From positions 62,001 through 126,000 of IMG/VR virus record IMGVR_UViG_3300043411_000921: a stretch of 64,000 nucleotides of DNA. One strand, given 5' to 3'. Below, piece after piece: positions 5,279-58,893 of the stretch. The notes under the pieces were generated by a model. That model made no database searches, was not told the origin of the DNA, and was given only the letters and a program-made list of their open reading frames with translations. The translations under genes were made by a program, and so were the position numbers. Position 1 is the first letter of the stretch, and each line of letters starts with the position of its first letter.

Positions 5279-5317
5279 TTAGTGGAAGATAACCAGAAGA
5301 GGGATCCAAGAGAGGGA
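5279..5317 (+). repeat. Dispersed repeat, copy 1 (intergenic)
   Basis: TTAGTGGAAGATAACCAGAAGAGGGATCCAAGAGAGGGA; 31 bp identical to 20716-20746 and 36/37 to 27850-27886. Confidence 0.9.
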
Positions 5318-5393
5318 ACCCTATAAGAGAAGATGTTTTGGAACTTCAGGGGGGCCTCCCCCGGCCCGGCCAGGATAAGGTCAAAGAAAATCC

Positions 5394-5422
5394 TTGACAC
5401 AACCTTCATCTCATTGTAGGAT
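5394..5422 (+). promoter_or_regulatory. Sigma70-type promoter for the RNA ligase gene
   Basis: TTGACA (5394-5399), 17-nt spacer, TAGGAT (5417-5422), 36 nt before ATG 5459. Confidence 0.55.
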
Positions 5423-5458
5423 CCCAACACAACATCAAGGCAGCGAGATAACAAAAAC

Positions 5459-6535
5459 ATGAGTACGCACGAAGTAAAAGTGATTCGAGTTGAAGAGGTA
5501 AGGGTGCATCCGAATGCAGATGCACTTGAAATCATTCCTGTTTGGGGATACCAAGCGGTTGTTCGCAAGGGACAGTTCCAAGTTGGTGATTTGGCTGCGT
5601 TCATTGAACCAGACAACACCGTGAAGCTCTCTCGTCCCGAGTTCCAACACTTGGATAAGGGAAAGGGTCGTGAACGTCATCGTCTTACGGTCGTTCGTCT
5701 CCGTGGTGAACCCTCTTATGGACTTTTGATCAAAGCTCCAGATGGTGCCAACGAAGGAGATGATGTCATGGAACAACTGGAAGTGGAGCATTACGATCCT
5801 CCAACTTTCTTCAGTGGAACCAAGGCTGGAGTTGCAACCCAAGGCCCAGAGTATGTCGAAGCCCCAGTTTACAAACTGGAGAATTTCAGGAAGTATCATC
5901 GTCTTTTCAACCCAGAAGATGAAGTGAATGTTTCCGTGAAGATTCATGGAACCAACGCACGATTTGTTTTTGATGGTGAGAAGATGCACGCTGGGAGTCA
6001 CAAAACTTGGAAGAGGAATCCAAGTGGAGTTGAGCCTCGTCAAATCACTTACACCAACAAGGAAGGTGAAGAAGTTACAAAGGTTATTGGACCCGAGTCT
6101 TGTCTTTGGTGGGAAGCTATTCGACAGAATCCTTGGATTGAGGATTGGTGTCGAGCGCATCCCAAGGCTGTTCTTTACGGAGAGATTTATGGTCCCAATG
6201 TCCAGGGAAGCCAATTTGCCTACGGAAAGAAAAATGGCGAATATGGTTTTGCTGCCTTTGATGTGATGGAGAATGGCCGTTGGGTTTCCAATGGAGAAAT
6301 GCTGGATAATCCAGTTTACTCAGAGGGGATGAAGGAAGTTGTTCCAGTGTTGTTTCGCGGGAAGCTTTCCGAAGTGAACCTTTCGGAACTGGCAGAGGCG
6401 AAGGAGACTATGTTCCCTGGACAGGTTGTTCGTGAGGGTGTTGTCGTGAAGTTGAATCAAGCTGAGAGGTTTGATTCCAAGCACGGAAGGGTAGCCCTCA
6501 AATATGTTTCTGATGTTTACCTCTCCATGAAGTGA
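5459..6535 (+). CDS. RNA ligase, DRB0094/Rnl2-like family
   Basis: N-terminal HPNADALE...GYQAVVRKGQFQVGD; motif I KIHGTN, YGEIYG, FAAFD, EGVVVK, LKYVS. Confidence 0.9.
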   Translation: MSTHEVKVIRVEEVRVHPNADALEIIPVWGYQAVVRKGQFQVGDLAAFIEPDNTVKLSRPEFQHLDKGKGRERHRLTVVRLRGEPSYGLLIKAPDGANEGDDVMEQLEVEHYDPPTFFSGTKAGVATQGPEYVEAPVYKLENFRKYHRLFNPEDEVNVSVKIHGTNARFVFDGEKMHAGSHKTWKRNPSGVEPRQITYTNKEGEEVTKVIGPESCLWWEAIRQNPWIEDWCRAHPKAVLYGEIYGPNVQGSQFAYGKKNGEYGFAAFDVMENGRWVSNGEMLDNPVYSEGMKEVVPVLFRGKLSEVNLSELAEAKETMFPGQVVREGVVVKLNQAERFDSKHGRVALKYVSDVYLSMK

Positions 6536-6545
6536 AACAGGCAAC

Positions 6546-6881
6546 ATGAAAGAAGGAATCGGCCTGAATTTCTCCGGTAAAGTCATCAAGAATAGAGATT
6601 TTTCTACTTGTTTCCTCGTTAGAGCAAACTTCCGAAAAACCGACCTCGTTCAGGTGATTTTCAATCACGCTGATCTTCGCTTTGCTGATTTTCGAGGATC
6701 GTTTATAGGTTATGCTGACTTTAGCGATGCTGATCTTCGTGGTGCGGCCTTAGATGGCGTGTATTTGAAATATGCAATCATTCGAGATGCGAACCTCATT
6801 GGTGCATGGTATGACAAGTTCACAGATTTTCCAGAAGGATTTGATCCAAAAAAGCCGGGATGTTTTGCGCAGATTAGCTAG
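6546..6881 (+). CDS. Pentapeptide-repeat protein
   Basis: ANFRK/TDLVQ/ADLRF/ADFRG/ADFSD/ADLRG/AALDG/ANLIG repeats. Confidence 0.85.
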   Translation: MKEGIGLNFSGKVIKNRDFSTCFLVRANFRKTDLVQVIFNHADLRFADFRGSFIGYADFSDADLRGAALDGVYLKYAIIRDANLIGAWYDKFTDFPEGFDPKKPGCFAQIS

Positions 6882-7248
6882 ATTTCAGATCCTCATAGAT
6901 CACTCTGTTCTCACGTCCCCAGAACCTAACCAATTGGCCAGATTTTACATTTGCTGCGTCTTCGTATGGTTGCAAACCTTCATCATCATTTGGGAACACA
7001 ACGCCCGCTTGACCTTGTTTGCAATGAGTCAACTCATGAGCCAAGGTTCTCAAGCAATCGGCCATTGCCCTGTTCTTGATAGCAACGAAAACTGTCATCC
7101 CATAAGGATCACAATATCCAGCGGTTGGCATTCCAGTTGTTTGTCTCTCAGATAGAGTGATGGTTATTTTTCCACGCAGCCCAAGTTCTTTGGCACAATG
7201 TTGAATGAACCGTTTGATGATTTCCAGGTTTTCTTTGGTGAGTTTCAT
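6874..7248 (-). CDS. HExxH zinc-metallopeptidase-like protein
   Basis: LRTLAHELTH...YEDAAN; start MKLTKENLE at 7248 with TAGTTA upstream. Confidence 0.6.
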   Translation of the reverse strand: MKLTKENLEIIKRFIQHCAKELGLRGKITITLSERQTTGMPTAGYCDPYGMTVFVAIKNRAMADCLRTLAHELTHCKQGQAGVVFPNDDEGLQPYEDAANVKSGQLVRFWGRENRVIYEDLKSS

Positions 7249-7302
7249 GGAGCAAGTGGAAATAACTAGAACAAGGGATTCTGCTGGGGTAGGCTTGAAC
7301 TC

Positions 7303-8313: not shown

Positions 8314-8317
8314 CACT

Positions 8318-9055: not shown

Positions 9056-9078
9056 TGTTGGTGTATGGTGCTCTTAGC

Positions 9079-10059: not shown

Positions 10060-10076
10060 AAGAAAAAACACAAGAC

Positions 10077-15644: not shown

Positions 15645-15667
15645 ACGCGCTCGCAACATTATCGGGC

Positions 15668-19958: not shown

Positions 19959-20871
19959 CAATCAGACAACAACAATCAGTGTGATCGGGAATGGATTTGT
20001 GGGTGGCGCAGTTGCCAATGGCTTCTCAAGGCTCAATCCAAAGGTTTACGACATTGATCCGAAAAGATCAACGTGCTCCCTAACAGAAGCTCTTGAATCA
20101 AAATTCATCTTTGTCTGTCTTCCAACCCCAATGGTAAGTGCAGAAGGTGGAGAAGCAAATCTCTCCATCATCGAATCCTTCTTTCAACAAGCATTCCAAC
20201 ATTCCATCAATCCCTCTTCTGTCTTTGTCATCAAATCAACAGTTCCAGTAGGAACAACCAAAAGACTTCAGAAACAATTCCCTGGTTTGAGGTTGGTTCA
20301 CAATCCAGAGTTCCTGACAGCAGCAAGGGCCAACCTGGATTTCATCAATGCAGACAGAACTGTTTTGGGTGGTGATGACCAGGATGCCCTTCAATCGCTC
20401 CAGGAGCTTTATGCGGGCGAGTTCCCTCATGTTCCTACCCTTACCATGTCCAGCACCGACAGCGAGCTTGTAAAATACTCTGCGAACTGTTTCCTGGCAA
20501 CCAAGACCATGTTCTTCAACGAGATCAAATTCCTCGCTGAGAAAATGGGTGCAACCTATGAGAACGTTGTCGCGGGAGTTGTCTCCGACAAAAGAATTGG
20601 TCCGAGTCACACAAAAGTTCCCGGACCTGATGGAGACTACGGGTTTGGTGGTACCTGTTTCCCCAAAGACATCAATGCCCTTGTTTCAACGATTGAAAGT
20701 TGTCAAGAAGATTGCTTAGTGGAAGATAACCAGAAGAGGGATCCAAAAGGGACTCATATAGTTCCTTCACCTTCGTCTAAGATTTTCAAAGCTGTCTGGG
20801 AGAGGAACAAGGAAGTTAGGAAGAACTGGGATTGGGCATCCAGTCCATCTGCCGTGAAAGGTCTGTCGTGA
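19948..20871 (+). CDS. ugd: UDP-glucose/GDP-mannose 6-dehydrogenase, short form lacking the C-terminal domain
   Basis: VIGNGFVG, VCLPTP, IKSTV, NPEFL, ELVKYSANCFLA, GFGGTCFPKD; carries repeat copy 2 near the C-terminus. Confidence 0.85.
   Translation: MMNNNQTTTISVIGNGFVGGAVANGFSRLNPKVYDIDPKRSTCSLTEALESKFIFVCLPTPMVSAEGGEANLSIIESFFQQAFQHSINPSSVFVIKSTVPVGTTKRLQKQFPGLRLVHNPEFLTAARANLDFINADRTVLGGDDQDALQSLQELYAGEFPHVPTLTMSSTDSELVKYSANCFLATKTMFFNEIKFLAEKMGATYENVVAGVVSDKRIGPSHTKVPGPDGDYGFGGTCFPKDINALVSTIESCQEDCLVEDNQKRDPKGTHIVPSPSSKIFKAVWERNKEVRKNWDWASSPSAVKGLS
20716..20746 (+). repeat. Dispersed repeat, copy 2 (in frame in the dehydrogenase)
   Basis: TTAGTGGAAGATAACCAGAAGAGGGATCCAA, encoding LVEDNQKRDP. 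Confidence 0.9.
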
Positions 20872-21117
20872 AAGTCAAGACGGCACTGCAATCCAAAACC
20901 GTACTCGAAAGACTACTATCATAAAGTCAAAGGCATTCCCGCCAAAGAAGTCTGGAAAAGGGACAAACAAAGAGTCAAAGCCTTGAAAGCTCTTGGTTAT
21001 TCAGTCTTCGTTGTTTGGGAAAATGATTTCAAAGATGAGCGAACTAAGACACTGGAAGGTGTCAAAGAATTTCTAGGGAAAGAGAATGAATCAACAACAA
21101 CTTCAACAGCCTGTTAG
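20872..21117 (+). pseudogene. 5'-truncated Vsr/EDxHD-like endonuclease remnant
   Basis: HCNPKPYSKDYYHKVKGIPAKEVWKRDKQRVKALKALGYSVFVVWENDFK; no in-frame start before the motif; the frame is closed upstream by the ugd TGA. Confidence 0.7.
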
Positions 21118-22649
21118 GAAAAACAAGATCCTGGTATTGAGCGACCATCCATTAAACTGACTTGTGACAGTGGATGTAAAATTGGGTGAATTGCTGGAAA
21201 CTCCTGAGAGCAGCACACGCAACAGCAAAACTGGAAACGGTATGTGCGATTGCAAAAAAGATGTGTTGATTGGACAATCAGCAGCCAAGCTCCTGTCTGG
21301 AAACAGTGGAGAAGGTTCAACGACTACGGTTAGCCTAAAAGCTCTTGCTCATGGCGATGATCCGACAGCGCCCAGCAATTCGACAATCGAATTGATGATA
21401 TAGTCTGTTCGTTGGTGAAAATCAGCGAGTAAACGTGTGTACTTCGGGTGTTGGTACCCAAAGCCGCTTTCTTATTCATGGTCTTGTAGCAACGGGAAGA
21501 TATTCGTTCCGTTGTCTTGGAGGAGCGATCAAACACCCGAACTATGATCCAATCGTAGTAAACCCAGATTTCATCATCAAACCTGTTGATGGCTTCGGAG
21601 ACAGGAATATGATCAGGAACCTCCTGATCAATGAAAGACCAGACGCGGTTCTACTGTTCACAGATCCAAGACAGTTTATGTGGCTTTGGGAAATGGAAGA
21701 TGAGATTCATCAGGTTTGCCCTATCGCTTATTGGCACGTCTGGGACAATGATCCATACCCTGCATTCAACGATGTTTGGTATCACTCAACAGACCTGATC
21801 AACTGTCTTTCTCACAAAACCTACGAGCTTGTCAAACCTCATTTTCCAGAGAGAACAAACTACATTCCTCACGCCTTTCCGAAAGAGGTTTATCATCCTC
21901 TTCCAGCAGAGACAGTAAAACAACTGAGGAGTGTGAATTACAAGGAGCGTGCTGACTGGTTCATTGGAGCTTGGATCAACAGGAATGCAACCAGGAAGAT
22001 GCCAAACGATGTCTTGATGTCTTGGAAGATGTTTTTGGATGATCTGGAGAAGAAGGAAGGTCACAGGAAGGCAATGCTCGTGATGCACACTGACCCACAA
22101 GACACAGAAGGACCAAACCTTTTTGCAACCGTCGAGAACCTTGGATTGACCAGTAATGTTGTGTTCTCAACTCAAAAGGTTGATTTCAACGACATGAATG
22201 CGCTTTACAACTCAGTTGATTTTATTGTGAACGTGTCGAAGGCAGAAGGGTTTGGATTGGCAACCTTGTCTGGTTTGATGGTTGGGAAACCGATCATTGC
22301 ACTGAAGACTGGGGGAATGACACGTCAGGTTGTGGATTATCGAGATGGAACAGAGCATGGGGTTGCCATTGATCCAGCTTGCAGAGTTCTTGTTGGCTCT
22401 CAGATGGTTCCTTACATCTTCGACGATCACTTCAAACATGAAGATTTGTCAGCAGCCTTTCTAAAGGTTTATTCCATGTCTCCAGAAGAGAAAGAAGTGC
22501 TTACCAAAAAGAACATTGCTTATGCTGAACACGAGTTCGGTTATGAGAAGATGATCTCTGAGTGGGATAGGACTCTGGATAAAGTGATCAGAGATTTCAA
22601 GAGCAACCCACCAAAACGCTGGACATGCTCCAAACTCAACAACAAGTGA
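21086..22649 (+). CDS. GT4 glycosyltransferase, spliced: join(21086..21152,21436..22649), 426 aa
   Basis: Exon 1 gives MNQQQLQQPVRKNKILVLSDHP; splicing restores SDHPLCTSGVGTQ; later EGFGL, GKPII motifs. Confidence 0.85.
21153..21435 (+). ncRNA. Group I self-splicing intron, no internal ORF (283 nt)
   Basis: P AATTGCTGGAAA 21189, Q AATCAGCAG 21276, R GTTCAACGACTA 21315, S ATGATATAGTCT 21395; P1 CATCCAT/GTGGATG with U-G at the splice site; P9 hairpin 21409-21428; terminal G 21435; frame restored. Confidence 0.92.
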
Positions 22650-27250: not shown

Positions 27251-28012
27251 ATGTCACAAGATGACTTGGCAAGGATCAGAGCAGAATCAACTGCTCAAAC
27301 CTTCAGGGAAACACAAAACACTGCAAATGTTGCTGCGAACACAGCAAAACTTGCCGCTGTTTCCACTGCAATAACAGCACTCCCAGCACCCGTGAATGCA
27401 GCAACAAGGATTTTGGGTGATGGTCTTTACGCAGCTTTCAAATTTCCTGTGACTGGAGTGAGGCAACCCGCTCCAGTTTCAGCAGATCCAATCAAACTGA
27501 TGGCTTACGCAATGGCTTTCTCTATCCTGAAAGCCTTGTGGTGTTTTATCAAGTCGCTCTTGAACCCTTTGCCATTCATTGGATCTTTTTTCCCTCTGTG
27601 CCCAAATGACCCTGACGGGGTTGGGTCTGATAGTTCTGACCCGGACAACATCAAGCTGAACCAAGCGAGCATGGCATTTGCTGGCGCTGTGGGGAATATA
27701 GAGAGCCTCCAAGGGGTCCAAGCACCTCCGGGACCATCCGGGGATTTCGGAGGCTCTATTAATCCTCCTGGAGCGATTCTCGATGCCGGGGAATCTTTTG
27801 AGGAGTACATTTCAAGAACTGCTGGTTTTTCAGGGGTTACATCTTCGGGAGTGGAGGATAACCAGAAGAGGGATCCAAGAGAGGGATTAATACAGATTGT
27901 TCCCACTTCTCAAACTCCGACAATCAATCCACCTGCTGAACCTGAGAGTTCCAGGGGATCTGGGTACGGGGAAGAATTTGCGAATGATTTGCGGAGAGGA
28001 TTTGGTCTATGA
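27251..28012 (+). CDS. Hypothetical baseplate-region protein
   Basis: 253-aa ORF; low-complexity C-terminal half contains repeat copy 3. Confidence 0.55.
   Translation: MSQDDLARIRAESTAQTFRETQNTANVAANTAKLAAVSTAITALPAPVNAATRILGDGLYAAFKFPVTGVRQPAPVSADPIKLMAYAMAFSILKALWCFIKSLLNPLPFIGSFFPLCPNDPDGVGSDSSDPDNIKLNQASMAFAGAVGNIESLQGVQAPPGPSGDFGGSINPPGAILDAGESFEEYISRTAGFSGVTSSGVEDNQKRDPREGLIQIVPTSQTPTINPPAEPESSRGSGYGEEFANDLRRGFGL
27850..27886 (+). repeat. Dispersed repeat, copy 3 (in frame)
   Basis: AGTGGAGGATAACCAGAAGAGGGATCCAAGAGAGGGA, encoding VEDNQKRDPREG. Confidence 0.9.
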
Positions 28013-30388: not shown

Positions 30389-31993
30389 ATGTACCGAAAA
30401 CTCCGTGCTGACAAAGACTCATACGTCACAAAAAAAATCATCGACAGCAGCAGACCAACACTCTCCAGGTCAACGGATGCCAACGTCGGGCAAGCTGGAA
30501 CCCTTGATCTGTTCAAACTCTACAACGCAACTCCAGTTCCCTCTGGAACTTCAGGGGTGGAACTTACCAGAGCAGTCATTCACTTCAACCTCGATCCGAT
30601 TGCCTCCTTAACAAGTTCAATCATCAACCCCAACCATTCTTCCTTCAAATGTTTCTTGTCGATGAAGGATGTGAATGGTGGTCAAACTGTTCCCTCCAAC
30701 TTCTCTCTTGTCGTCAACCCTTTGGGAAAGGCTTTTTCAGAAGGAAGAGGAAATGACGTTGTTGGATTTAGGGATTTGGATGCAGTGAACTGGTTTACAG
30801 CTTCCATTGATGGTGGAGTTGTTACCCCTTGGACCAGTGGTGGGATTGGCTATGGTGGGGAATCCTCCGATGGAAGTGCTGACTATATTACTCATCTTTC
30901 TTCCCCCTCTCTTGGTTATGTTCCACTAACCTTCTCCCAGAGCTTTGCCAGAGGTGACGAAGACCTTCTCATCGACATTACTTCTTTTGTCAGTGTTTCT
31001 CTTGCTGGAGCAGTTCCAAACTACGGCTTTAGGATTGCTTTTAGCGGCTCCCAGGAAACGGACACGGTAACAAGATTTGTCAAAAGGTTCAGCAGCAGAC
31101 AATCCAGAAACAGTAACCTTCATCCGACTCTTGTGGTGAAATACAACGATACCTTCTTCGACAATCAAGCACACCTTCTTCTGGACAGAAACAATAAGGT
31201 TGGCGTATACAACTCGGTATTCGGATCCCCAGCCAACTTTATTTCTGGAAGCACGCCTGTTTCCGGTTCAGGAAGCATCATGCTCGAACTGGTTGCAAGT
31301 CAAAGTGCTTATGTCACGGCAACAACGTACAGCTTCAGCCACCAGAGAACGATCACCTACACTTCCTCAAGCTGGAACTATTTTTCCCAGAGCTTCACAG
31401 GTTCTCAAATCTCTTTTGCTGGGAATGGGATTTATCAGACCGGAAGTTATTATGCCGACGTGTTTATCCAGAAGGCAGCAGCAGGCTTATCTGGGGTCTT
31501 GAAGCCAGATGGCTCCGTTGATATGATCCCGGTCTGGAAGTCGCCGGATAATGCCGTTACGTTCGACGTAGGCCCATCCCTGACCTTCTTCCCCCAACAA
31601 GGGAAAGCCTCCGTTGCTGGATCGAGGAACTACATCACAAACGTTGTGAATCTACAAGAAGTGTATGGAAATTCTGATGTTGTGGCAATGAGAGTTCTTA
31701 CAGTTGACTTTGATACGACCCTAACAAGCTTTTACAGTCCATACCAAATCAAACCAAAACTGTTTGAGAATATGCAGTGGAGAATTATTGATCCGTTTTC
31801 CAAGGAAGTGATCATTCCCTTTGATGAAGTCGGAACAAAGTTGTCTGCTGATGGTGAAGGCATGTACTTCAAGGTCTACATGGAAGATCTACCAATCAAC
31901 AGAATTTATGAACTTGAGTTCTTGATCAAAGAGAACGGCGAAGCAAACCTCGTTCAAAACAAAGGGTTTACCTTCATGGTGATTCAACAATGA
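30389..31993 (+). CDS. Virion structural protein (DNRLRE-like N-terminus)
   Basis: ADKDSYV...DANVG...RAVIHFNL; Ser/Gly-rich beta composition; baseplate operon. Confidence 0.5.
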   Translation: MYRKLRADKDSYVTKKIIDSSRPTLSRSTDANVGQAGTLDLFKLYNATPVPSGTSGVELTRAVIHFNLDPIASLTSSIINPNHSSFKCFLSMKDVNGGQTVPSNFSLVVNPLGKAFSEGRGNDVVGFRDLDAVNWFTASIDGGVVTPWTSGGIGYGGESSDGSADYITHLSSPSLGYVPLTFSQSFARGDEDLLIDITSFVSVSLAGAVPNYGFRIAFSGSQETDTVTRFVKRFSSRQSRNSNLHPTLVVKYNDTFFDNQAHLLLDRNNKVGVYNSVFGSPANFISGSTPVSGSGSIMLELVASQSAYVTATTYSFSHQRTITYTSSSWNYFSQSFTGSQISFAGNGIYQTGSYYADVFIQKAAAGLSGVLKPDGSVDMIPVWKSPDNAVTFDVGPSLTFFPQQGKASVAGSRNYITNVVNLQEVYGNSDVVAMRVLTVDFDTTLTSFYSPYQIKPKLFENMQWRIIDPFSKEVIIPFDEVGTKLSADGEGMYFKVYMEDLPINRIYELEFLIKENGEANLVQNKGFTFMVIQQ

Positions 31994-49316: not shown

Positions 49317-49331
49317 AGGTAACACACCAAC

Positions 49332-50555: not shown

Positions 50556-50660
50556 CGGTTAGTCGTCGTCGAAACCACATTTCTTCCTCTCCCCAATTCT
50601 TTCCCAAGACCCCAGTCCCAGCTCACTTACAAATTGATACATCTACTTATGTTTTCAACA

Positions 50661-51788
50661 ATGAGACAACAGAAGATGTATGATTATCGGTGTTTTTCTT
50701 GTGGAAAAGAGTTTGCACACAGGAAACGAAACAAGATTTACTGCTCCCGAGATTGTTACTTTGCAGAGAAGGGAAAAACAAAGGAGTGGAGAGCACAAGA
50801 GAGAATTTGTTTGTTGTGCGGTGAGTCTTATTTGCCTTCGCACAAGGAGCAGATGTATTGCGGAATAAAGTGTTTTGCTGAGAAGAAGTTGAAAATTGAC
50901 CTAAGCAAATCTTTGCCAGTTGAGTGTTTCAAATGCGGCAAGGAATTTCTGAGAAGGCCGTCTGCATTTTCGGAAAAGAACTTTTGTTCTAGGGCATGTA
51001 TAAAACTAGATCCCGAGACGAGAAACTGCCCAGCGTGTAAGGAAGATTTTGTTGTTAATTGGCCTGGAAGTAAGAAGAGATTCTGTTCCAAATCTTGTTC
51101 TCGCAGCGGGGAGTTCCATCCAATGTATGGCAAACGTTTTTCCTTACCAGAAGGATATGAACCTTGGACGAAGGGAAAAACGGCAGAAACTGACGAGCGC
51201 ATCGCGGCATTGGGTAGGAAAATTTCGGAAAAAATCAAAATCCAATATGAAAACGGTCTAAGGTGTGTTGATGGCCCAAAAAACCCGAACTATGGAATCA
51301 CACGAGATCAACGAACACCCGAACAGTTGGAAAGATATTCAAAGGCCGCCGCAAAAAGAGTTCAGGAAGGAGTGCTTGATAAGGCACACCCGAGATTTTT
51401 GCGGGGCAAACATCGAAGTGAAAAGATAGGCCGGGAAATCTTTTTCAGGTCTTCTTTGGAGAAACGTGTAATGGTTTGTTTGGACGCGGATCCGACTGTC
51501 TTAACTTACGAGTACGAGCCCGTTCAGATAAAGTACGACAACGGCAAACGATACATCCCAGACTTTATCGTATCCTACTCGAATGGAAGAAAGGTTCTTT
51601 TGGAAGTCAAGGGAGGTCAGTATTTGGAAACCACAGCCACTCAACTCAAGGCACAAGCCGGACAAACTTACTGTCACTTACACAACTTGAGTTATGTGGT
51701 CATGGCAACCAAAGACATCATAGTCCTTGAAAACTCTCTTGGAATCAAGTTTTCTTACCACGATCTAAAGGAATCTCTGAAAAAATGA
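50661..51788 (+). mobile_element. Free-standing homing-endonuclease-like gene: Zn-ribbon repeats, NUMOD3-like segments, TnsA-type PD-(D/E)XK domain
   Basis: Repeated CxxCGKEF...YCSxxC units, HPMYGK and NPNYG, then FRSSLEK...YEYEP...YIPDF...LLEVKG; own TACTTA at 50644; start 50649 or 50661. Confidence 0.75.
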
Positions 51789-52129: not shown

Positions 52130-52186
52130 GACTACTTTCCTTTTTTGACGGACAGCAAAGCAGTTTGAGAAAACGAGAAGGGCAGC

Positions 52187-54604
52187 ATGTCCATTCAAAA
52201 GTTCAGACCGGGTGATATTGAGTTCTTCACAGTTCAAACAACACCCGGAACATCTTTCATTTCCAGCAGCATCACTGGCACAACCGGATCGGCTTATGTC
52301 TACCCACGCCGTTCCTCCATTCTCAAAGATCAATTCGCAATCGTAACAACAGCAACAGGAGCTTTCACCAAAACTTCAAACGTTGGTGAAATACTCCAGT
52401 TTGCCAAACTTGCTCAAAACACAACTGAACTGACGGATAGAATCAAAACATATCTCGGCGTTGTTGGAGAGCTTCCAGAAAATCCAAGGAATCAAGCAAA
52501 GCAGGAAGTGGTGAGGTATACACCAGGAGTCAACCTGGATCTCAACATGACCAGGAAGTTCGTAACCACAAATGTTTTGATGCCTTACTGTGCTGCGTAT
52601 GGAACAAACTACAACTTCGGGTTCACCAACTATCATTCCCTGAACTTTTTGACAGCAAGTGGTCTTCCCACAGGATCGGCTTTTCTGTACCCTTCAAGCG
52701 GTTCAGCCACCCTGGGGTCAGGAGCCGTCGTCTCTGCCTCCTATATTCCTTCTGGTGCCTTTACCTTCGACTTCTATATCAACCCGAGATATTCCATCGA
52801 CCAAGAAAGCTCAGAGTTCAAAGCTGGAACCCTTCTTCACATGTCTGGAGCTTACGCTCTTTCACTTGTGACAGGCTCCAGTAGAGATCCAAATGGTTTG
52901 TCTGACGGTTACAGAATTATGCTGCAACTCAGCAGTTCTGCCACCAGACTTCCATCGACCATTGATCCAACAAGTCCTCCAGCACTTACTTTCCTCTCCG
53001 ATGATAACTCTCTTTCAAGAGGAGCATGGCAGCATGTTTCTATTCGCTGGGGAACAGAGTCTTACAACTTTGGCTCAGGCTCCTTCCTCGTCGATGGAAC
53101 AGAAAAAGGAACGTTCTATATTCCTTCTGCCTCAGTTGCCCCCAAAGAACAAACAGGAATCCTGAATCCTTGTGTCTTGACAGTTGGAAACTTCTTGGAG
53201 TGTGCTCAAACAGGACAAGCGGCGCTGTTTTTCTCTGACAGAGCACAAACACGTTATGGAATTCCTGTCAATGGTTCTCCGCTGACAACAGATCCATTGT
53301 TAGATGCTCCCAGCGTTTATTCTCTCAATCATCCTCTGAATGCAGAAGTGCATGAGTTGAAGATTTACAACCGTTACCTCTCTCAAGAAGAAATTCATTC
53401 AAGAAGTCTGACTGGCCCTTCCCTTCCAGACCCTTCTCTCCTGTTTTACCTTCCTCCATTCTTCTGTGAAGAATCTCCAACGAGGTCTGTTGATTCCATT
53501 GGAGGAGTTGGCGGTGTTCTTGTTCATCCTTTCCAGGCTGTTGATGGAACCACACGTCATCCTTTCAATGTTGATTTGTCTTTCGACACTGGTGGTCATT
53601 ACATCAACCTTGAAAACTTCTCCAGAGACTTTGCAACTGGGAACTATCCAAGGCTTATCAACCTTTCAGGTCAAGCACTCAATGGAAACACAGAACAGTT
53701 GACCTGCAATGGTTTTCTATATGCCTCTGGATCGAACAGAAAGGCGTCATTAAGCGTCTTGCCGAATGATAACGGGGTCTTTATGCCAAATTGGTTTGCG
53801 GCCCTAGAAAAGCTTTCTACGGGCTCCTACGTTACCGATAATGGCGACAAGGCACTCAACCATGTCTCCCTCAGAAATCTTTATTCCCTTGACAGCATCT
53901 ACGACCTCGTTCCACCATCTTCTGGTTCGGCAACCCTAAACACAGACACAACCTCCAGAAGTTCAATCATTGCCTCCATCTCTGGATTCGATGTGACAAG
54001 CTCTTTCGGAACCTTGAGTCCACAAAGAACCCCGACAATCCTTCAGAGAACTCAAGAAAACAGTTCTCTTCAAGTTGTGATGTTTGATGTCAGCAACCTG
54101 TTTTATGGCAACAGGATTTTGCCAGGAACATTTGTGCTGAGGGACACAAACCTCTCAAACAGTTATGGCAAGGTTGCAATCACGCTGAAAGATGATGGTT
54201 TCGGGAGTTTGTATCGTGCTGATTGCACTGGTTCTCAAGCTGCTTACAACCATGTTGGCAATGTGTTCTATGATAACGGAGTTGTTTTGATCAGCAATCC
54301 CAGCCTTTATTGGTTCGGGGAGAATGGGTTTGAATGTTCGTTCAAGGGAGAAAGAGGTGTGCATGTCATGAAAGCACGTCTCAGGGCAAATCCTTTGGAG
54401 CTTGTCTCTTCTTCTAATCCTGGTTGGTCTGCTTCGCTGCAAGCCACGGATAATGCCTCTCAGTTCGATCAACGATATGTTTATATCACCGATCTCTACC
54501 TCCACGATGACAACCTGAATGTGATCGCAAAAACCAAACTAGCTCAACCCGTTCTGAAAAGATCGGGTGAGAAGTTGGTGTTTGATGTTACGCTGGATTG
54601 GTGA
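52187..54604 (+). CDS. Baseplate/tail structural protein with LamG-like domain
   Basis: FTFDFYINP, WQHVSIRW, EVHELKIYNRYLS; C-terminal YITDLYLHDDNLNVIAKTKLAQP. Confidence 0.6.
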   Translation: MSIQKFRPGDIEFFTVQTTPGTSFISSSITGTTGSAYVYPRRSSILKDQFAIVTTATGAFTKTSNVGEILQFAKLAQNTTELTDRIKTYLGVVGELPENPRNQAKQEVVRYTPGVNLDLNMTRKFVTTNVLMPYCAAYGTNYNFGFTNYHSLNFLTASGLPTGSAFLYPSSGSATLGSGAVVSASYIPSGAFTFDFYINPRYSIDQESSEFKAGTLLHMSGAYALSLVTGSSRDPNGLSDGYRIMLQLSSSATRLPSTIDPTSPPALTFLSDDNSLSRGAWQHVSIRWGTESYNFGSGSFLVDGTEKGTFYIPSASVAPKEQTGILNPCVLTVGNFLECAQTGQAALFFSDRAQTRYGIPVNGSPLTTDPLLDAPSVYSLNHPLNAEVHELKIYNRYLSQEEIHSRSLTGPSLPDPSLLFYLPPFFCEESPTRSVDSIGGVGGVLVHPFQAVDGTTRHPFNVDLSFDTGGHYINLENFSRDFATGNYPRLINLSGQALNGNTEQLTCNGFLYASGSNRKASLSVLPNDNGVFMPNWFAALEKLSTGSYVTDNGDKALNHVSLRNLYSLDSIYDLVPPSSGSATLNTDTTSRSSIIASISGFDVTSSFGTLSPQRTPTILQRTQENSSLQVVMFDVSNLFYGNRILPGTFVLRDTNLSNSYGKVAITLKDDGFGSLYRADCTGSQAAYNHVGNVFYDNGVVLISNPSLYWFGENGFECSFKGERGVHVMKARLRANPLELVSSSNPGWSASLQATDNASQFDQRYVYITDLYLHDDNLNVIAKTKLAQPVLKRSGEKLVFDVTLDW

Positions 54605-54646
54605 ATTATAGTTTTCGGAGGAAGGCTTTGAGGAGGGAATGTGATG

Positions 54647-54670
54647 TTGCCAGCATAGATTTACTGGCAA
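54647..54670. terminator. Hairpin between convergent transcription units
   Basis: TTGCCAG / CTGGCAA inverted repeat; no clear U-tract. Confidence 0.3.
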
Positions 54671-54685
54671 ATAACTAGAAAAGAA

Positions 54686-55984
54686 TCAGTCGTGGAGGAT
54701 TTCTCTAGCGCCCTGCTCCATCCTCAACGCTTCCATTTCAGCGGCAGAAGATGTATCAACAGAGGCAATGGTATGATGCTCTTCATGGTTTGACTTCATG
54801 ATAAAGGCAGCATCCATCAAGTGCATCACATAAGGCAAAAGGTTCGGATCGTTCAAAACCTTTGACTGGAAATCAGACTTGTAGAACTTCACGTCTTGAA
54901 AGATTTCTCCTGTTTCGTGATCTGTTACCAGAAGGTTTTTCCAGGCTCCTGTTCCTGCGATTTCAACTTTCTTTCCATCCATGAGGACTGGATCGGAAAC
55001 CTTGTCACAGTATTGCCGAAGTTCATCGAAGAGTTGTTCAGATTCCATGATACCTCTTCCAAAGTGAATTTCGAAGGAGACTTCACGCCAAGGACGAGCG
55101 ACTTTGTTTTTGATGGTTTTGGCTGTGACTTCGATTCCGATGACAGCTTCTTTCCCATTGATGGTTTTTTTGAGTTGTTGTCCTCCAGTGAGTTTGATAC
55201 GGACGGAGGAGTGATATGGGATTGCCATACCCCCAGGGGTTGTGTGCGGGTCTCCGTATAAAACGCCTATTTTCTGGCGCTGCTGATTTACCAAGAGCAA
55301 GCAAACGTTTTTGTCACCAATCACATGAGTGATTTTTCTGAAGCCCTTAGAAAGCACCCTGGCGGCAAGACCAATGGTGTTTTGATCGTACTCACCATCA
55401 ATCTCAGCCTTGGGAGCACTCGCAGCAACAGAATCCCAAATCACAGTAACTGGAACGTCTGCTTTGAGGTTCCTTGCCTTCTCAATCGTGCTCTCAATAA
55501 CCTTGAAAATCTCTTCAATACAAGTCTCTTGAATGAACACGAAACGCTTGCGAACATCAACACCAACAGACTCAAGGTTTTCAACAGATGTAGCGTTCTC
55601 TGTGTCGATGTAGACAACAATCCCACCCATGCGCTGTGTTGCCTTTGCAACCTCATAAGTCAAGTGAGACTTGCCGATAGAGGTTGGACCTTGAATTTCG
55701 ATAATGCGACCTTCTGGGAGACCACCGTTCCTTCTGTTGGAAATGATGTAGTCAAGCTGTCTGGAACCCGTACTGATCCAGCGTTTCACGGTCGTTGGCG
55801 CTTCATCCGTTCCAAGGTTGAAGGCTTTTCTCATTCCAGCTTCTTTGTTGACTTGCTTGATAAGGTCAGCAGAGAAGTCATCATCTTGAATATTAGATGA
55901 TTGAGTTTGTGAAGAGGCAAAAATCGTTTGTGTTTGTTTGTTGGATGCTGCTTGTTGTGGTTGTTGTTTTTTTGGAGGAGCCAT
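54686..55984 (-). CDS. recA: RecA/UvsX recombinase
   Basis: ISTGSRQLD, GGLPEGRIIEIQGPTSIGKS, YIDTE, VIWDSVAA, NQQR, TPGGMA, KNKVARP. Confidence 0.95.
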   Translation of the reverse strand: MAPPKKQQPQQAASNKQTQTIFASSQTQSSNIQDDDFSADLIKQVNKEAGMRKAFNLGTDEAPTTVKRWISTGSRQLDYIISNRRNGGLPEGRIIEIQGPTSIGKSHLTYEVAKATQRMGGIVVYIDTENATSVENLESVGVDVRKRFVFIQETCIEEIFKVIESTIEKARNLKADVPVTVIWDSVAASAPKAEIDGEYDQNTIGLAARVLSKGFRKITHVIGDKNVCLLLVNQQRQKIGVLYGDPHTTPGGMAIPYHSSVRIKLTGGQQLKKTINGKEAVIGIEVTAKTIKNKVARPWREVSFEIHFGRGIMESEQLFDELRQYCDKVSDPVLMDGKKVEIAGTGAWKNLLVTDHETGEIFQDVKFYKSDFQSKVLNDPNLLPYVMHLMDAAFIMKSNHEEHHTIASVDTSSAAEMEALRMEQGAREILHD

Positions 55985-56055
55985 TGTATTTCGCTTTCCT
56001 ATTCTTCAAACTAACAGAACTGTTTTCTGGAATCAATGTGATTGCAGAAACGGAA

Positions 56056-56099
56056 AGAACCCTCCAGAGGGACAGGGTTGTCGTTCTCTGGAGGGTTCT
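56056..56099. terminator. Long hairpin between ssb and recA
   Basis: Perfect 14-bp arms AGAACCCTCCAGAG / CTCTGGAGGGTTCT with inner GACA/TGTC pairing. Confidence 0.55.
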
Positions 56100-56117
56100 C
56101 TTAGTTTTGGTTTTGTA

Positions 56118-56957
56118 TCAGGTCAAATCGCTGAAAGCATCATCAAGTTGATCTTCTGCTTCGGAAGTGCTTGCTGGATTTGCACCTCTTGTTGAGTTAT
56201 GGTCTGTTCCTTCTGCGGAAGGTTTGGCAGAACCACCAGAGAGACCGGCGACAAAGTTTTCCAGGATCTCTGTCAATTCTTCGTTGGTCTTGCATTGCCG
56301 ACCAAACATCTCTTCAAACTTCGGAGTTGCAGCGAGCCATTTGGCAGCCAGAGCCTTGTCTTTGGAAAGAGGACTTGGCTTTTTCCGAGGTTGAACGTTG
56401 ATGTTCTTCACTGGAGAACCATTCCAGAGCTTTGGCTTTCCACCTTCCATTGCTGGAGTGACAGTCAGAGTAAAATCATAACCGTCAGTGGTTGAGAGCA
56501 TGTCTTCATCAACGTTGTCCTTGTGGGTGAGAATGCCGTAAATGGCATCTCGAATTTCCTTGCTGAACTCCCAGACTTGTGGACCCTTGTCTTCCTCACC
56601 ACGAACGATGATTGCAGCGTAAAAACGATCCTTGCTGCGGAGATGCTTTGCGATTGCCCAGCCGTCTGGATGTTTCTTGGATTGACGAAGTTCTTCGTAT
56701 TGCTCCTTGATAAAGTCAGGCTTGCCCATGCAGAAGGGAGCAACGATTCGCTTCTCAACGAGAGGCTTGTCATAATAAGCGACCGTCATAAACGGCTCAC
56801 CCGTTGAAGACTCGATTGGGAGAAAACGAATATCGTGTTCGCCCATTGTAGCCTTCCAGTAAACAGTCTTGGTGAATCCTGCACCAGAGTTGGAGTTGGA
56901 ACCTTTTTCGCCTTTTGTGAGAGCCGCTTTGATTGCACTGAGATCGTATGTTGCCAT
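56118..56957 (-). CDS. Single-stranded DNA-binding protein, T4 gp32-like
   Basis: YWK...HDIRFLP, RFYAAIIVRGEEDKGPQVWEF, GYDFTLT, acidic tail EDQLDDAFSDL. Confidence 0.85.
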   Translation of the reverse strand: MATYDLSAIKAALTKGEKGSNSNSGAGFTKTVYWKATMGEHDIRFLPIESSTGEPFMTVAYYDKPLVEKRIVAPFCMGKPDFIKEQYEELRQSKKHPDGWAIAKHLRSKDRFYAAIIVRGEEDKGPQVWEFSKEIRDAIYGILTHKDNVDEDMLSTTDGYDFTLTVTPAMEGGKPKLWNGSPVKNINVQPRKKPSPLSKDKALAAKWLAATPKFEEMFGRQCKTNEELTEILENFVAGLSGGSAKPSAEGTDHNSTRGANPASTSEAEDQLDDAFSDLT

Positions 56958-57082
56958 GATGTGTTTCTCTTTATTCTTTCTTGGTTTTCTTGTGACCACT
57001 ATTGTCTTTGTTGGTTTGATGCTGGGACCGAGTGTGGTCTATCCTCATTACCAGCATTTTCGGGTTACTGATTTGATTGATG

Positions 57083-57718
57083 TTATTGAACCGGAATTGT
57101 TCCTTCTTTGTTTTTCCCTTGCATACAAGCGGCTTTTACTGCTTGTGAAAGCACAACTGAAAGCCAAGTTGCTCCTGGTGTTGGAAGATCCTCTTGAATG
57201 TTTTTTGCTCCGATTGAAGAGATGGCGTACCACTCGTCCATTTCGAGTTGAACTCCAGCATTGTTCAGCAGCATCAAACTCATTTGTGATACTGGCATGT
57301 GCTGGAATCTCTCTTGGATGTTGTAATAAACACCGAGTTTCTCTCTATGCCAATCAGACTCATTGTGGACGTAATAGTCCTTTGTCTGTGTTCCCATCTT
57401 TCCAATGTCGTGGAAGAGGGAGACAAGGATCAGACTAGGGATTGAAATTACCTCAGTCAACGAATAAGCCTGACGGAGTTTTGCTCCGTTTTGAAGAACA
57501 CGAAGAGAATGCTCAACCAAGCCGCCTGGATGGCAGCAGGTATATTCTCTCCGCGTCGAAGCTGGAGCAACCATGATCCTCTCAGCATTCTCATCAATCA
57601 CAGAGAGAAGGTTGCCGAGTTTTGGATTGCCAATTTTGGCTGCTTGAGTCTTGAAAAGCTCAAAGTTCTTGATGATGGTTTTTTCGAGGTCGTCTTGTTT
57701 GGTTTTGTTTGGTGTCAT
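57083..57718 (-). CDS. HD-domain phosphohydrolase/nuclease
   Basis: HPGGLVEHSLRV...LFHDIGK. Confidence 0.8.
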   Translation of the reverse strand: MTPNKTKQDDLEKTIIKNFELFKTQAAKIGNPKLGNLLSVIDENAERIMVAPASTRREYTCCHPGGLVEHSLRVLQNGAKLRQAYSLTEVISIPSLILVSLFHDIGKMGTQTKDYYVHNESDWHREKLGVYYNIQERFQHMPVSQMSLMLLNNAGVQLEMDEWYAISSIGAKNIQEDLPTPGATWLSVVLSQAVKAACMQGKNKEGTIPVQ

Positions 57719-58893
57719 TTATGGTTTGGGATGGTAAAGTTTTCGTCGATGGCCATAAAGAAACGAGTTTCTGGGAAGCCTTCAATCTCAACGCTTCCAA
57801 CTTTAGCCAAGGCAAAAAGACCATTCAATGAGTTTGGGTGACAGTCCAGGACCACCGCATCGTGGTTGAAAAACAATGGAAAAACTGTGTTGTGGAGCCT
57901 TCCTTGTTCTTCTAAGTATCTGATAACATTAGTAAATCCGAGAAAAGAGATGTCAGCAGCGGTGCTTTGGATGTAGTGGTTGACGAGAGTATGCCTAGTC
58001 TCCGTTGCAATCCTCCGACCATAGAAATTCGTAATAAACTTTCTATTGCTGGTTTCCCATTCGATCTTTAGTTTTTCTTGAAGAAGATCCAGCCCGAAAA
58101 ATTCTCTTGCGCTGGAGATGAGATCTTCAATTTCTGATTGAGAGAGGCCGAATGGGAGGAGTTGCTGATTGAGTGCATCTAGTCCGATCCCATAAAGCTG
58201 GGAGATGACTGCCTTCTTCACGACCTCTCTGGGAAGGTCTGAGTTGAAATCGCTGTATATGTCTGGATTGCATCCCTTGGATCCCTCTTCTGGTAATCCT
58301 CCACAAAGCAACTCTCGTGCCACCCTCGCAACCCTTGGTTCCAAGCACTTATAGTCCAGTGCCACAACCAAACCACCCTCATCCTTCCACCTGGACTCCA
58401 GCAAACCCCTATAAACCTTTGGGAGATGAAGCAAGGCAGGCCCAGCAACCGTGTGAAGCCTTCCAGTGACTGTGGTCACACGATCATATTCCACAACCCT
58501 TGCAAACCCATTCGAATCAGGCTTGAAAGTCCCAGTGTGCCCCGTCTTATCCAACCCAGAAAACCTTTCAAAAGCATCCAGGTTGATTTTGGCAGGACGC
58601 AGTTGATCAAAAACCCAAGAGGTCGGTTCCCAGACTTTTTGAAGGTAACTCGTGTCGAGGGATGCAACCTCCCGATGGTAGTCTTGGACATGCCCCGTAA
58701 TCGCTCTATACGCCTTATCTGGGCAGGCAAATTGCCAGGGCACCCTGGACCCTTGGAGAGATGGTGCAAGCCCCCTATAAGCCTTCTGGATGGCTTCTGG
58801 TGCAAGGGGGGGTTCGGGGATGAGAAAGAGTTTACTGATGAGAAATGGATCCATATACTGGCGAGGGGTAACACTCAGAAAATCAAGTGGCAA
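57715..58893 (-). CDS. polA: Family A DNA polymerase, polymerase domain only
   Basis: TVTGRL, motif A LDYKCLEPR, motif B REVVKKAVISQLYG, NHYIQSTAAD, motif C NHDAVVL. Confidence 0.85.
   Translation of the reverse strand: MPLDFLSVTPRQYMDPFLISKLFLIPEPPLAPEAIQKAYRGLAPSLQGSRVPWQFACPDKAYRAITGHVQDYHREVASLDTSYLQKVWEPTSWVFDQLRPAKINLDAFERFSGLDKTGHTGTFKPDSNGFARVVEYDRVTTVTGRLHTVAGPALLHLPKVYRGLLESRWKDEGGLVVALDYKCLEPRVARVARELLCGGLPEEGSKGCNPDIYSDFNSDLPREVVKKAVISQLYGIGLDALNQQLLPFGLSQSEIEDLISSAREFFGLDLLQEKLKIEWETSNRKFITNFYGRRIATETRHTLVNHYIQSTAADISFLGFTNVIRYLEEQGRLHNTVFPLFFNHDAVVLDCHPNSLNGLFALAKVGSVEIEGFPETRFFMAIDENFTIPNHK
58273..58304 (-). repeat. Dispersed repeat, copy 4 (in polA, different frame)
   Basis: Minus strand GTGGAGGATTACCAGAAGAGGGATCCAAGGGA; 28/29 match to copy 3; read as CGGLPEEGSKG. 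Confidence 0.9.

What the first reader, a model, noticed from the sequence alone, without database searches (positions are those of the whole stretch)
5279..58304. Dispersed ~29-37 bp element placed in genes in different reading frames
Core GTGGA(A/G)GAT(A/T)ACCAGAAGAGGGATCCAA, followed by a short variable purine spacer and GGGA, occurs at 5279-5317(+), 20716-20746(+), 27850-27886(+) and 58273-58304(-). Host loci are unrelated: intergenic, ugd, a baseplate-region gene and polA. It reads VEDNQKRDP twice and GGLPEEGSK once, so conservation is at nucleotide level, not protein level. All three coding copies are in sense orientation. It is purine-rich, non-palindromic apart from GGATCC, and has no evident terminal inverted repeats or transposase. 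Inference: an undescribed short selfish insertion element (compare Rickettsia palindromic elements, which also add peptides to proteins) or a long protein-binding/RNA signal tolerated inside ORFs.
Basis: partly seen in the sequence, partly recalled or inferred. Interest (0 to 1): 0.85.

Follow-up and report, generated by a model that had tools for sequence, protein, structure and literature searches.

The report
Conserved dispersed signal in phage genes
A 20-30 base sequence is kept nearly letter-perfect at about 13 places in a large uncultured T4-like phage genome, inside genes as well as between them, and a sister lineage keeps its own version at some of the same places, so it is a working signal (most likely for transcription control) and not junk DNA.

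Summary
The core GTGGARGATWACCAGAAGAGGGATCCAA occurs four times in the window, with 0 expected by chance. A fifth, diverged copy lies antisense at 30906-30930.

The window is part of a 241-kb uncultured T4-like myovirus contig that carries at least 13 copies. Relatives from several independent assemblies carry them at the same loci, so this is not an assembly artefact.

- **ugd:** the copy is a clean 21-codon insertion compared with about 77 homologues.
- **polA:** the copy is not a simple insertion. It sits where homologues have a (S/C)GT(Q/L)P loop.
- **Selection:** in orthologues fetched by protein, positions 1-21 of the core differ at 4 of 126 sites, against 459 of 1809 in the flanks. Selection therefore acts on the nucleotides.
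- **Sister clade:** this clade (polA 45% identical) has its own version, GTGGAACATTACCAGAGAGG. It occurs in that clade's polA, downstream of its portal gene and at about six other loci. The set co-evolves, which implies one common trans-acting reader.

About 18 of 24 independent loci point the same way as the local genes, and many lie 50-180 nt upstream of a start codon.

My best reading is a mobile regulatory cassette, probably a phage-specific promoter or transcription-control site (confidence 0.4). The main rivals are a nickase or endonuclease site, RNA sense/antisense tags, and a purely selfish element. No known family fits.

The parts
5282..5327 (+). Copy 1, intergenic. Core 5282-5310, purine spacer, TA-rich box TATAAG at 5322-5327. 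It lies 23 nt from the start codon of the divergent NUDIX gene (5258, -) and 177 nt upstream of the RNA-ligase ATG (5459, +).
   Evidence: orthologous copies in L006, L007 and L134
20713..20775 (+). Copy 2. A 63-nt (21-codon) in-frame insertion in the UDP-glucose dehydrogenase gene. Core 20719-20746, frame VEDNQKRDP, about 125 nt before the stop codon.
   Evidence: alignment A2: 8 homologues show a 21-column gap; all more distant loci are 15-22 codons shorter
27851..27895 (+). Copy 3, in the hypervariable C-terminal part of the 253-aa ORF 27251-28012. Same frame as copy 2, and 158 nt upstream of the next gene's start (28009).
58260..58304 (-). Copy 4, in the polymerase-domain ORF of polA (57715-58893), between motif A (DYKCLEP) and the DIY motif. 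Frame GGLPEEGSK. It has T where every other copy has A, because TAA would be a stop in this frame.
30906..30930 (-). Copy 5, diverged (GTGGAACATAACCA variant). It is antisense inside the + ORF 30389-31993, where its complement is read as LSSPSLGYVPLT.
   Evidence: weak nhmmer hit; same 14-mer variant in L126; exact 22-mer in L125, L144 and L145

Best explanation
**What is shown.** The element is a clade-specific cis-acting sequence signal of an uncultured 241-kb T4-like myovirus.

- It has an essentially invariant 20-nt core, GTGGARGATAACCAGAAGAG.
- A semi-conserved purine-rich tail (GGGATCCAAG...) follows.
- A TA-rich box (TATAAG, TATAG or TNTAAG) lies about 38-46 nt from the start.
- At least 13 copies per genome sit between genes and, in frame, inside genes.
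- Each locus keeps the core under purifying selection.
- The whole set has changed together between two sister clades.

**What is inferred.**

- All copies are read by one trans-acting factor that co-evolves with them.
- New copies arise by pasting cassettes of about 45-65 nt, as seen in ugd. They survive inside ORFs because the sequence has no stop codon in five of the six frames (one sense frame reads TAA) and encodes a hydrophilic loop.
- The most likely role is a phage-specific promoter or promoter-proximal transcription-control site, that is, a mobile regulatory cassette. On this reading the factor is a phage RNA polymerase, sigma factor or activator.
For: 1. **Non-random and multi-copy.** Four exact copies against 0 expected. 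Thirteen copies in the 241-kb contig and about 16 ortholog groups in the clade.
2. **Selection on nucleotides.** In orthologues fetched by protein similarity, so not selected on the motif, core positions 1-21 differ at 0/63 sites (ugd) and 4/63 sites (copy 3). The flanks differ at 9-42%. Synonymous positions are frozen. Only position 6 (A/G) varies freely.
3. **Co-evolution.** The clade of polA homologue P0016 (45% identical to the window's polA) has its own core, GTGGAACATTACCAGAGAGG. It occurs in that clade's polA at the homologous site and at 7 other loci. One of these lies just upstream of the orthologue (57% identical) of the gene that follows the portal gene. Our clade has its own version in that same place.
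4. **Promoter-like anatomy.** The element is asymmetric, with a sharp 5' edge. The 20-nt invariant block is followed by GGG and a decaying purine-rich stretch.
5. **Promoter-like placement.** About 18 of 24 independent loci are co-oriented with the local genes. At least 14 of them lie 50-180 nt upstream of the next co-oriented start codon. In one locus (G9) a G/C hairpin precedes the element.
6. **Room for an unknown promoter class.** The window has no T4-type late promoter TATAAATA, so some promoter classes of this phage are unknown.
7. **New copies are insertions.** ugd has 21 extra codons compared with about 77 homologues.
8. **Not a host sequence.** There were 0 matches in 185,579 bacterial and archaeal genomes.
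Against: - Five or six loci are antisense to co-directional operons or genes. These are G5 (L010), G6 (L014, whose flanking ORFs were verified as coding by third-position periodicity), G7, G13, L165, and window copy 30906-30930. A promoter at these sites could only make antisense RNA.
- Among intergenic loci alone the orientation bias is 11:5, which is not significant.
- Copy 1 is followed within 66 nt by a G/C hairpin and then by a separate sigma-70-like promoter.
- The polA copy and the chaperonin-like ORF copy (L122) are more than 500 nt from the next gene.
- I identified no phage RNA polymerase, sigma factor or activator gene.
- The TA-rich box is not a general upstream motif in the window.
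- No transcription data were available.
Confidence: 0.4

Rival explanations
1. The core is the recognition site of a phage-encoded sequence-specific DNA enzyme, such as a nickase, a homing-type endonuclease, or a replication or recombination initiator. Repair from other copies (gene conversion) keeps the copies identical, spreads variable lengths of flank, and occasionally seeds new copies.
For: - The length (20-30 bp) and the asymmetry fit such sites. Orientation relative to genes need not matter, and 6 of 24 loci are antisense.
- Pairs of copies share flanks of different lengths. Examples are ugd and copy 3 (about 65 nt), L013 and L111 (about 85 nt), and L165 and L166 (about 80 nt). This looks like co-conversion tracts.
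- The set is homogenised within each clade and includes a copy inside the essential polA gene, a classic endonuclease target.
- The genome has other mobile DNA: a group I intron with an empty site in a relative, and gene-content indels nearby.
Against: - No nuclease gene is linked to the copies. The TnsA/endonuclease-I-like ORFs are not adjacent to them.
- Cutting one's own genome at 13 sites is costly.
- Variants specific to one copy (A/G at position 6, T in polA) persist, which argues against frequent homogenisation.
- The 18:6 orientation bias is not predicted by this model.
Confidence: 0.25
2. The element acts in RNA. Transcripts that carry it in sense (polA, ugd, portal, and several 5' leaders) pair with transcripts that carry its complement (intercistronic spacers of small-gene, primase and phosphoesterase operons). 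The resulting duplexes of 20-30 bp time RNA decay or translation. Alternatively, one RNA-binding protein reads the element.
For: - Both orientations occur in transcribed spacers.
- A long, nearly mismatch-free core that co-varies across all copies between clades is what base pairing predicts.
- The only freely variable position is a purine transition.
Against: - There is no stable or conserved secondary structure. Fold z-scores range from -1.5 to +0.5, and there is no Rfam match.
- The sister clade has only 1 antisense copy among 8.
- The temporal classes of the genes are unknown.
- No expression data were available.
Confidence: 0.12
3. It is a purely selfish short insertion element (RPE- or MITE-like) with no function for the phage. 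Its similarity reflects recent spread or passive gene conversion.
For: - The ugd copy is an insertion with empty sites in homologues.
- Copy 3 is absent from homologues at 36-40% identity.
- Copies occur in three reading frames and in both orientations.
- There is no obvious structure.
Against: - Every copy examined is fixed at the same locus in relatives that differ by 5-18% in DNA.
- The core stays invariant while the inserted tail and the flanks diverge.
- At least two positions (polA and downstream of portal) are shared with a clade whose core differs.
- There are no terminal inverted repeats, target duplications or transposase.
Confidence: 0.12
4. It is a solitary CRISPR-repeat mimic (an RNA anti-CRISPR) or another copy of a host sequence.
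For: The length (28-36 nt) and the lack of a palindrome resemble some CRISPR repeats.
Against: - Exact scans with the 24-mer and the 20-mer cores found nothing in 185,579 species-representative bacterial and archaeal genomes.
- Copies sit in frame inside essential genes.
Confidence: 0.02

Closest known systems
PeSLs (promoter-early stem-loops), the mobile regulatory cassettes of T4-type phages (PMC2839356, PMC4122927)
   Same: Both are short conserved regulatory repeats scattered through T4-like genomes. Both are associated with gene-content change and are proposed to spread by recombination. A PeSL-like unit (poly-G/poly-C hairpin at 5349-5362 plus a sigma-70-like promoter at 5394-5422) sits next to copy 1, and the same hairpin sequence lies near copy G13.
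   Different: The element itself has no sigma-70 hexamers and no stem-loop. It also occurs in frame inside conserved genes (polA, ugd, portal), and its core is much longer and more invariant.
Promoters of single-subunit phage RNA polymerases (T7, T3, SP6 type) - from my own knowledge
   Same: Both have an asymmetric, nearly invariant block of about 20 nt followed by GGG and a purine-rich initially transcribed region. Both have many copies per genome, some inside the 3' ends of upstream genes. Both have a clade-specific sequence that co-evolves with its reader.
   Different: No such polymerase was found here. A quarter of the copies are antisense to the local genes. The host phage is a T4-like myovirus, a group not known to use such promoters.
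Consensus sequences at localized single-strand nicks of T5 and phiKMV-like phages - from my own knowledge
   Same: Both are conserved asymmetric sequences of about 20 nt, present a few to a dozen times per genome, in coding and non-coding DNA alike.
   Different: Nicking could not be tested here. In those phages the sites are all on one strand, whereas here both strands carry copies.
   Same: Both add short peptides in frame to unrelated proteins and also occur between genes.
   Different: RPEs are 100-150 bp, palindromic and decaying. This element is 30-65 nt, non-palindromic, and has a core frozen by selection.

Membership tests
MITE / classical insertion element | Terminal inverted repeats and target-site duplication | tested here: not met
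   Alignment of the copies with their flanks and the repeat search show neither. A candidate AAGATT duplication in ugd would give a 71-nt addition, which does not fit the in-frame 63-nt insertion.
Rickettsia palindromic element-like selfish peptide-adding repeat | Palindromic (hairpin-forming) sequence | tested here: not met
   Fold z-scores are -1.5 to +0.5 for nine copies. The only palindrome in the core is GGATCC.
Rickettsia palindromic element-like selfish peptide-adding repeat | In-frame insertion into otherwise conserved proteins, with empty sites in homologues | tested here: met
   This is met for ugd only: 21 extra codons compared with all more distant homologues. It is not met for polA.
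Rickettsia palindromic element-like selfish peptide-adding repeat | Neutral decay of old copies | tested here: not met
   The core differs at 4/126 sites against 459/1809 in the flanks of unbiased orthologues.
PeSL (T4-type promoter-early stem-loop) | Sigma-70 consensus promoter plus an adjacent G/C stem-loop within the repeat | tested here: not met
   No promoter-like hexamers or stem-loop lie within the element. The one sigma-70-like site (5394-5422) and the hairpin (5349-5362) are outside it.
Phage-specific (T7-type) promoter | Asymmetric block of about 20 nt, invariant among copies and specific to a clade | tested here: met
   Information profile and two clade-specific versions.
Phage-specific (T7-type) promoter | All copies point at downstream genes | tested here: inconclusive
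   About 18 loci are co-oriented and 6 are antisense.
Phage-specific (T7-type) promoter | Cognate polymerase or sigma factor encoded by the phage; transcripts start at the site | not testable with these tools
   Only parts of the 241-kb genome could be read, and no RNA data were available. The large unannotated ORFs gave no hits.
Nick or homing-endonuclease recognition site | Strand breaks at the site; a linked nuclease gene | not testable with these tools
   No read-level data were available. No nuclease gene is adjacent to the copies.
Solitary CRISPR repeat (RNA anti-CRISPR) | Matches the CRISPR repeat of a host | tested here: not met
   There were 0 matches in genome contigs for two core patterns. 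The host itself is unknown.
Translational bypass ('hop') or byp element | A coding gap that cannot be read through (stop codon or frame break) with matching take-off and landing codons | tested here: not met
   All host ORFs are open through the element.
Known structured RNA (Rfam) | Match to a covariance model | tested here: not met
   The only hit in the window is a group I intron elsewhere. There were no hits at the copies with permissive thresholds.

The most novel reading that the evidence does not exclude
The repeats are copies of a segment of the phage's own DNA-polymerase gene that evolve in concert with it. In two clades the dispersed copies carry that clade's polA sequence. The core encodes the (S/C)G(T/G)LP loop that element-free homologues also have. 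This would be a self-templated system that couples polA to a dozen other loci. It could work through sense/antisense RNA tags that time early and late expression, or through endonuclease-driven gene conversion in which polA is both source and target.
Probability: 0.2. Interest if true: 0.85.

Novelty: new variant of a known kind. Interest (0 to 1): 0.62.

Why it matters
Large uncultured phages are mostly annotated gene by gene, and their regulatory code is unknown. Here a single short sequence marks about 13 sites per genome. It survives inside essential genes as translated loops and changes in step across all sites between sister lineages.

If it is a promoter or control site, it gives a direct handle on the transcription programme of a whole uncultured T4-like lineage. 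It would also show that regulatory cassettes can be pasted into ORFs. If instead it is a nick, endonuclease or RNA-pairing site tied to polA, it would be a new way of linking the replication gene to the rest of the genome.

Either way it is a cautionary case: an 'insertion in a protein' that is selected as DNA and not as peptide.

Tried and rejected
- **RNA structure.** Nine copies folded no better than shuffles. An 8-bp inverted repeat in the sister-clade version is present in only 4 of 8 copies and shows no compensatory change.
- **Rfam.** No family matches at the copies.
- **Host CRISPR repeat or host sequence.** Nothing was found in 185,579 genomes.
- **MITE, target duplication, translational bypass.** All rejected (the ORFs are open).
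- **Sigma-70 promoter within the element.** None in either orientation (and inspection).
- **T4 late promoter TATAAATA.** Absent from the window. TATARG is enriched 2-fold but is not placed upstream of genes, so the TA-rich box is not a general promoter motif.
- **Sigma-54-like site.** A perfect TGGCAC-N5-TTGC lies just upstream of the polA copy. It is not shared by the other copies, so I treat it as chance.
- **'Core derived from native polA DNA'.** The motif-level match is good. However, the DNA similarity of the consensus to short-loop polA genes of distant relatives (L169, L106) is no better than the best chance matches in those loci. I keep this as an inference only.
- **Positional orthology of the copies near the phosphoesterase and primase genes.** Rejected, because the neighbouring proteins are unrelated between clades.
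- **Third and fourth clades (P0013, P0002).** Their polA cores gave no hits in the viral collection, and there was no second copy in the 14-21 kb I could read. This is uninformative.
- **Genome-wide map of copy positions.** Coordinates were recovered only for the portal copy.
- **Search for a phage RNA polymerase among the large unannotated ORFs.** No result.
- **DnaA-box and iteron-like readings of the core.** Considered by eye and judged too weak.

Full report
**1. Observation**

All four have 0 mismatches, and there were 0 matches in 100 shuffles. A 15-mer sub-core with 2 mismatches finds the same four sites.

The alignment shows a sharp 5' edge at GTGGA. Identity runs through about 29-36 nt and then decays.

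- Copy 1 lies between a NUDIX gene on the - strand and an RNA-ligase gene on the + strand.
- Copy 2 is in a UDP-glucose dehydrogenase gene.
- Copy 3 is in a 253-aa ORF of unknown function, two genes upstream of a baseplate-wedge gene.
- Copy 4 is in the polymerase-domain ORF of a family-A DNA polymerase.

A fifth, diverged copy (GTTAGTGGAACATAACCAAGAGAGGGGG, 30906-30930, - strand) lies antisense inside the + ORF 30389-31993. It is kept exactly in three relatives.

**2. What genome this is**

The window is positions 62001-126000 of IMG/VR contig 3300043411_000921, which is 241,399 nt long. The contig encodes a T4-like portal followed by a prohead protease (in a locus outside the window), and within the window gp32-like and RecA/UvsX-like proteins and a baseplate wedge. 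Its DNA polymerase is family A.

No GenBank phage is close. The best portal match is Microcystis phage Mel-JY01 at 39% identity.

Relatives at 81-96% DNA identity exist in several independent assemblies and carry the copies at the same loci. This excludes an adapter or assembly artefact.

**3. Copy number and anatomy**

Scans with the full core and with its 5' 18-20 nt give 13 copies in the 241-kb genome and about 16 ortholog groups in the clade.

An information profile of one copy per group shows three things:
- Positions 1-20 (GTGGARGATAACCAGAAGAG) are essentially invariant. Only position 6 (A/G) is free.
- GGGATCCAAG is semi-conserved.
- A purine run follows.

By inspection of the aligned copies, a TA-rich patch (TATAAG, TATAG or TNTAAG) lies at about +38 to +46. 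The genome is poor in TA, so this patch stands out.

The element has no stop codon in five of its six frames; the polA-type sense frame reads TAA in the A-form. The polA copy reads GGA-TTA, whereas all other copies have GATAACC, which would be a stop codon in the polA frame.

**4. Insertion or native sequence?**

- **ugd.** Eight aligned homologues lack exactly 21 codons at the site (alignment A2). All 77 more distant viral loci are 15-22 codons shorter over the same span. This copy is an insertion of about 63 nt. Its 3' half (...IVPSPS) also resembles the sequence after copy 3 (...IVPTSQ), so the pasted unit was about 65 nt.
- **Copy 3.** It lies in a hypervariable region. Homologues at 36-40% identity lack it.
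- **Portal.** The copy lies in the portal's variable C-terminal tail.
- **L122.** Another copy lies in a chaperonin-like ORF.
- **polA.** This one is different. Nine homologues at 43-50% identity have (S/C/N)GT(Q/L)P followed by a short acidic stretch at the aligned position, between motif A and DIY. The window's CGGLPEEGSKG is only a few residues longer. From my own knowledge, canonical family-A polymerases have SGD at this position. The DNA similarity to those native loops is, however, not above chance.

**5. Selection**

Copies found by pattern search are biased, because they were selected for having the core. I therefore used orthologues fetched by protein similarity. In ugd (3 genomes), core positions 1-21 differ at 0/63 sites, against 8.7% upstream and 26% downstream. 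In copy 3 (3 genomes), they differ at 4/63 sites, against 24% and 42%. Pattern-found groups show the same picture.

Synonymous positions inside the core are frozen, while the rest of the inserted peptide evolves fast. Selection therefore acts on the nucleotides and not on the peptide. Every copy I could check is present at the same locus in every close relative, so I see no sign of recent transposition.

**6. Co-evolution between clades (the key result)**

The polA of a 288-kb relative (P0016, 45% identical) carries GTGGAACATTACCAGAGAGG at the homologous site. That exact 20-mer occurs at seven other loci in contigs of that clade. Those copies share a longer consensus...CTAGCCA, the core, GGG, a G-rich run (GGGGTTGG), and a TA-rich box at about +47.

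One of these copies lies just after the portal gene, 171 nt upstream of a 302-aa gene. That gene is 57% identical to the 297-aa gene that follows our portal. Our clade has its own version 134 nt upstream of that gene.

At least two positions are therefore shared between clades, and each is 'spelled' in its clade's dialect. Intermediate spellings (GTGGAACATAACCA) exist in our genome. This is what one expects if one trans-acting reader co-evolves with all its sites, or if the copies are homogenised by gene conversion. It is not expected for dead insertions.

**7. Orientation and placement**

I counted independent loci in both clades. About 18 are co-oriented with the local genes and 6 are antisense.

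The antisense loci are:
- G5 (L010)
- G6 (L014)
- G7 (L013)
- G13 (L120)
- L165
- window copy 30906-30930

For G6, the flanking ORFs were confirmed as coding by third-position periodicity.

At least 14 co-oriented copies lie 50-180 nt upstream of the next start codon. These include three coding copies near 3' ends of genes (ugd about 160 nt in the intron-free relative, copy 3 at 158 nt, portal at 134 nt). One intergenic locus (G9) has a G/C hairpin ahead of the element.

The overall bias has a one-sided binomial p of about 0.01. Among intergenic loci alone the ratio is 11:5, which is not significant.

**8. Mechanism**

*Shown:* a multi-copy sequence that is selected at the nucleotide level, is specific to a clade, and co-evolves as a set.

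*Inferred:* a single reader.

I rank a phage-specific promoter or transcription-control site first, at 0.4. The reasons are the T7-like anatomy (invariant 20-mer, then GGG and purines), the placement upstream of genes, the orientation bias, and the absence of the T4 late promoter motif in the window.

The antisense copies, the hairpin directly after copy 1 and the lack of an identified polymerase or sigma factor are real problems for this view.

The rivals are:
- **A nickase, endonuclease or replication site with gene conversion (0.25).** It explains the shared flanks of variable length and the indifference to orientation.
- **RNA sense/antisense tags (0.12).**
- **A purely selfish element (0.12).**
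- **A CRISPR-repeat mimic (0.02).**

**9. Comparison with known families**

The nearest described things are the PeSL mobile regulatory cassettes of T4-type phages (PMC2839356, PMC4122927). Promoters of single-subunit phage polymerases and the nick-site consensus sequences of T5 and phiKMV-like phages are also close; I know those from memory. The element fails the defining features of PeSLs, MITEs, RPEs, bypass elements and every Rfam family (see the membership table).

I rate it a new variant of a known kind, namely dispersed cis-acting cassettes in phage genomes. Two features are unusual: in-frame residence in conserved genes, and a copy that overlies a native-looking loop of polA and changes with it.

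Noticed in passing
window 21086-22649 (intron 21153-21435): A group I intron (Rfam RF00028, 84 bits) splits a glycosyltransferase gene into exon 1 (21086-21152) and exon 2 (21436-22649). The relative L012 has the uninterrupted gene (...CCA TTG TGT ACT...), which is an empty site. The boundaries are inferred from that comparison: U before the 5' splice site and G at the intron's end.
   Followed up: partly
window 20873-21085: About 215 nt between ugd and the glycosyltransferase gene are absent from relative L012. They hold an ORF fragment (20983-21117) that by eye looks like the C-terminus of a Vsr/DUF559-type endonuclease. Pfam gave no hit, so this is unconfirmed.
   Followed up: partly
window 57715-62288 (-): The polymerase is in two ORFs in different frames: 58905-62288 (1127 aa, no Pfam or PDB sequence hit) and 57715-58893 (392 aa, motifs A-C). 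Relatives split the upstream part differently (1075 aa, or 664 + 476 aa).
   Followed up: partly
window 58305-58340 (-): A 9-nt tandem duplication (giving RVARVAR) lies just upstream of the polA copy. It is present in the window and in L004 but not in L001. The same stretch contains a perfect sigma-54-type consensus TGGCAC-N5-TTGC (58308-58322), which is probably chance.
   Followed up: no
window 5349-5422: A PeSL-like unit lies upstream of the RNA-ligase gene: a poly-G/poly-C hairpin (GGGGGGCCTCCCCC), then an A-rich stretch, then TTGACA-17-TAGGAT. The same hairpin sequence recurs next to another copy of the element in L120.
   Followed up: partly
whole window: The genome is poor in TA dinucleotides. 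TATAAATA is absent (0.14 expected), and TATARG occurs 18 times against 9 expected.
   Followed up: partly
window 54604-54618 versus L001 2946-4089: Relative L001 has an extra 394-aa ORF with pentapeptide repeats between the convergent 805-aa gene and the RecA-like gene. The window lacks it.
   Followed up: partly
window 4168-4780 versus L006 and L007: The 172-aa ORF 4201-4719 (-) is missing in L007 and is replaced by about 390 nt of other sequence in L006. This gene-content polymorphism lies about 500 nt from copy 1.
   Followed up: no
L106 12737-15384; L108 13754-16442; L169 6416-8230: In distant relatives the RecA/UvsX-like gene is split into two RecA_N-bearing ORFs. In L106 and L108 a 301-302-aa ORF lies between them, and the downstream piece carries a faint intein-splicing hit. 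In the window the gene is intact (54686-55984).
   Followed up: no
window 3761-4207 (-) and 50634-51788 (+): Two proteins carry TnsA-like / phage endonuclease-I-like nuclease domains. Neither is adjacent to a copy of the element.
   Followed up: no
L117/L127, L115/L124, L129 (other viral contigs): Unrelated phage genes begin ATG GTG GAR GAT AAC CAG AAR (MVEDNQK...). They match the first 18 nt of the core. This is probably chance at the expected background rate, but I did not examine it.
   Followed up: no
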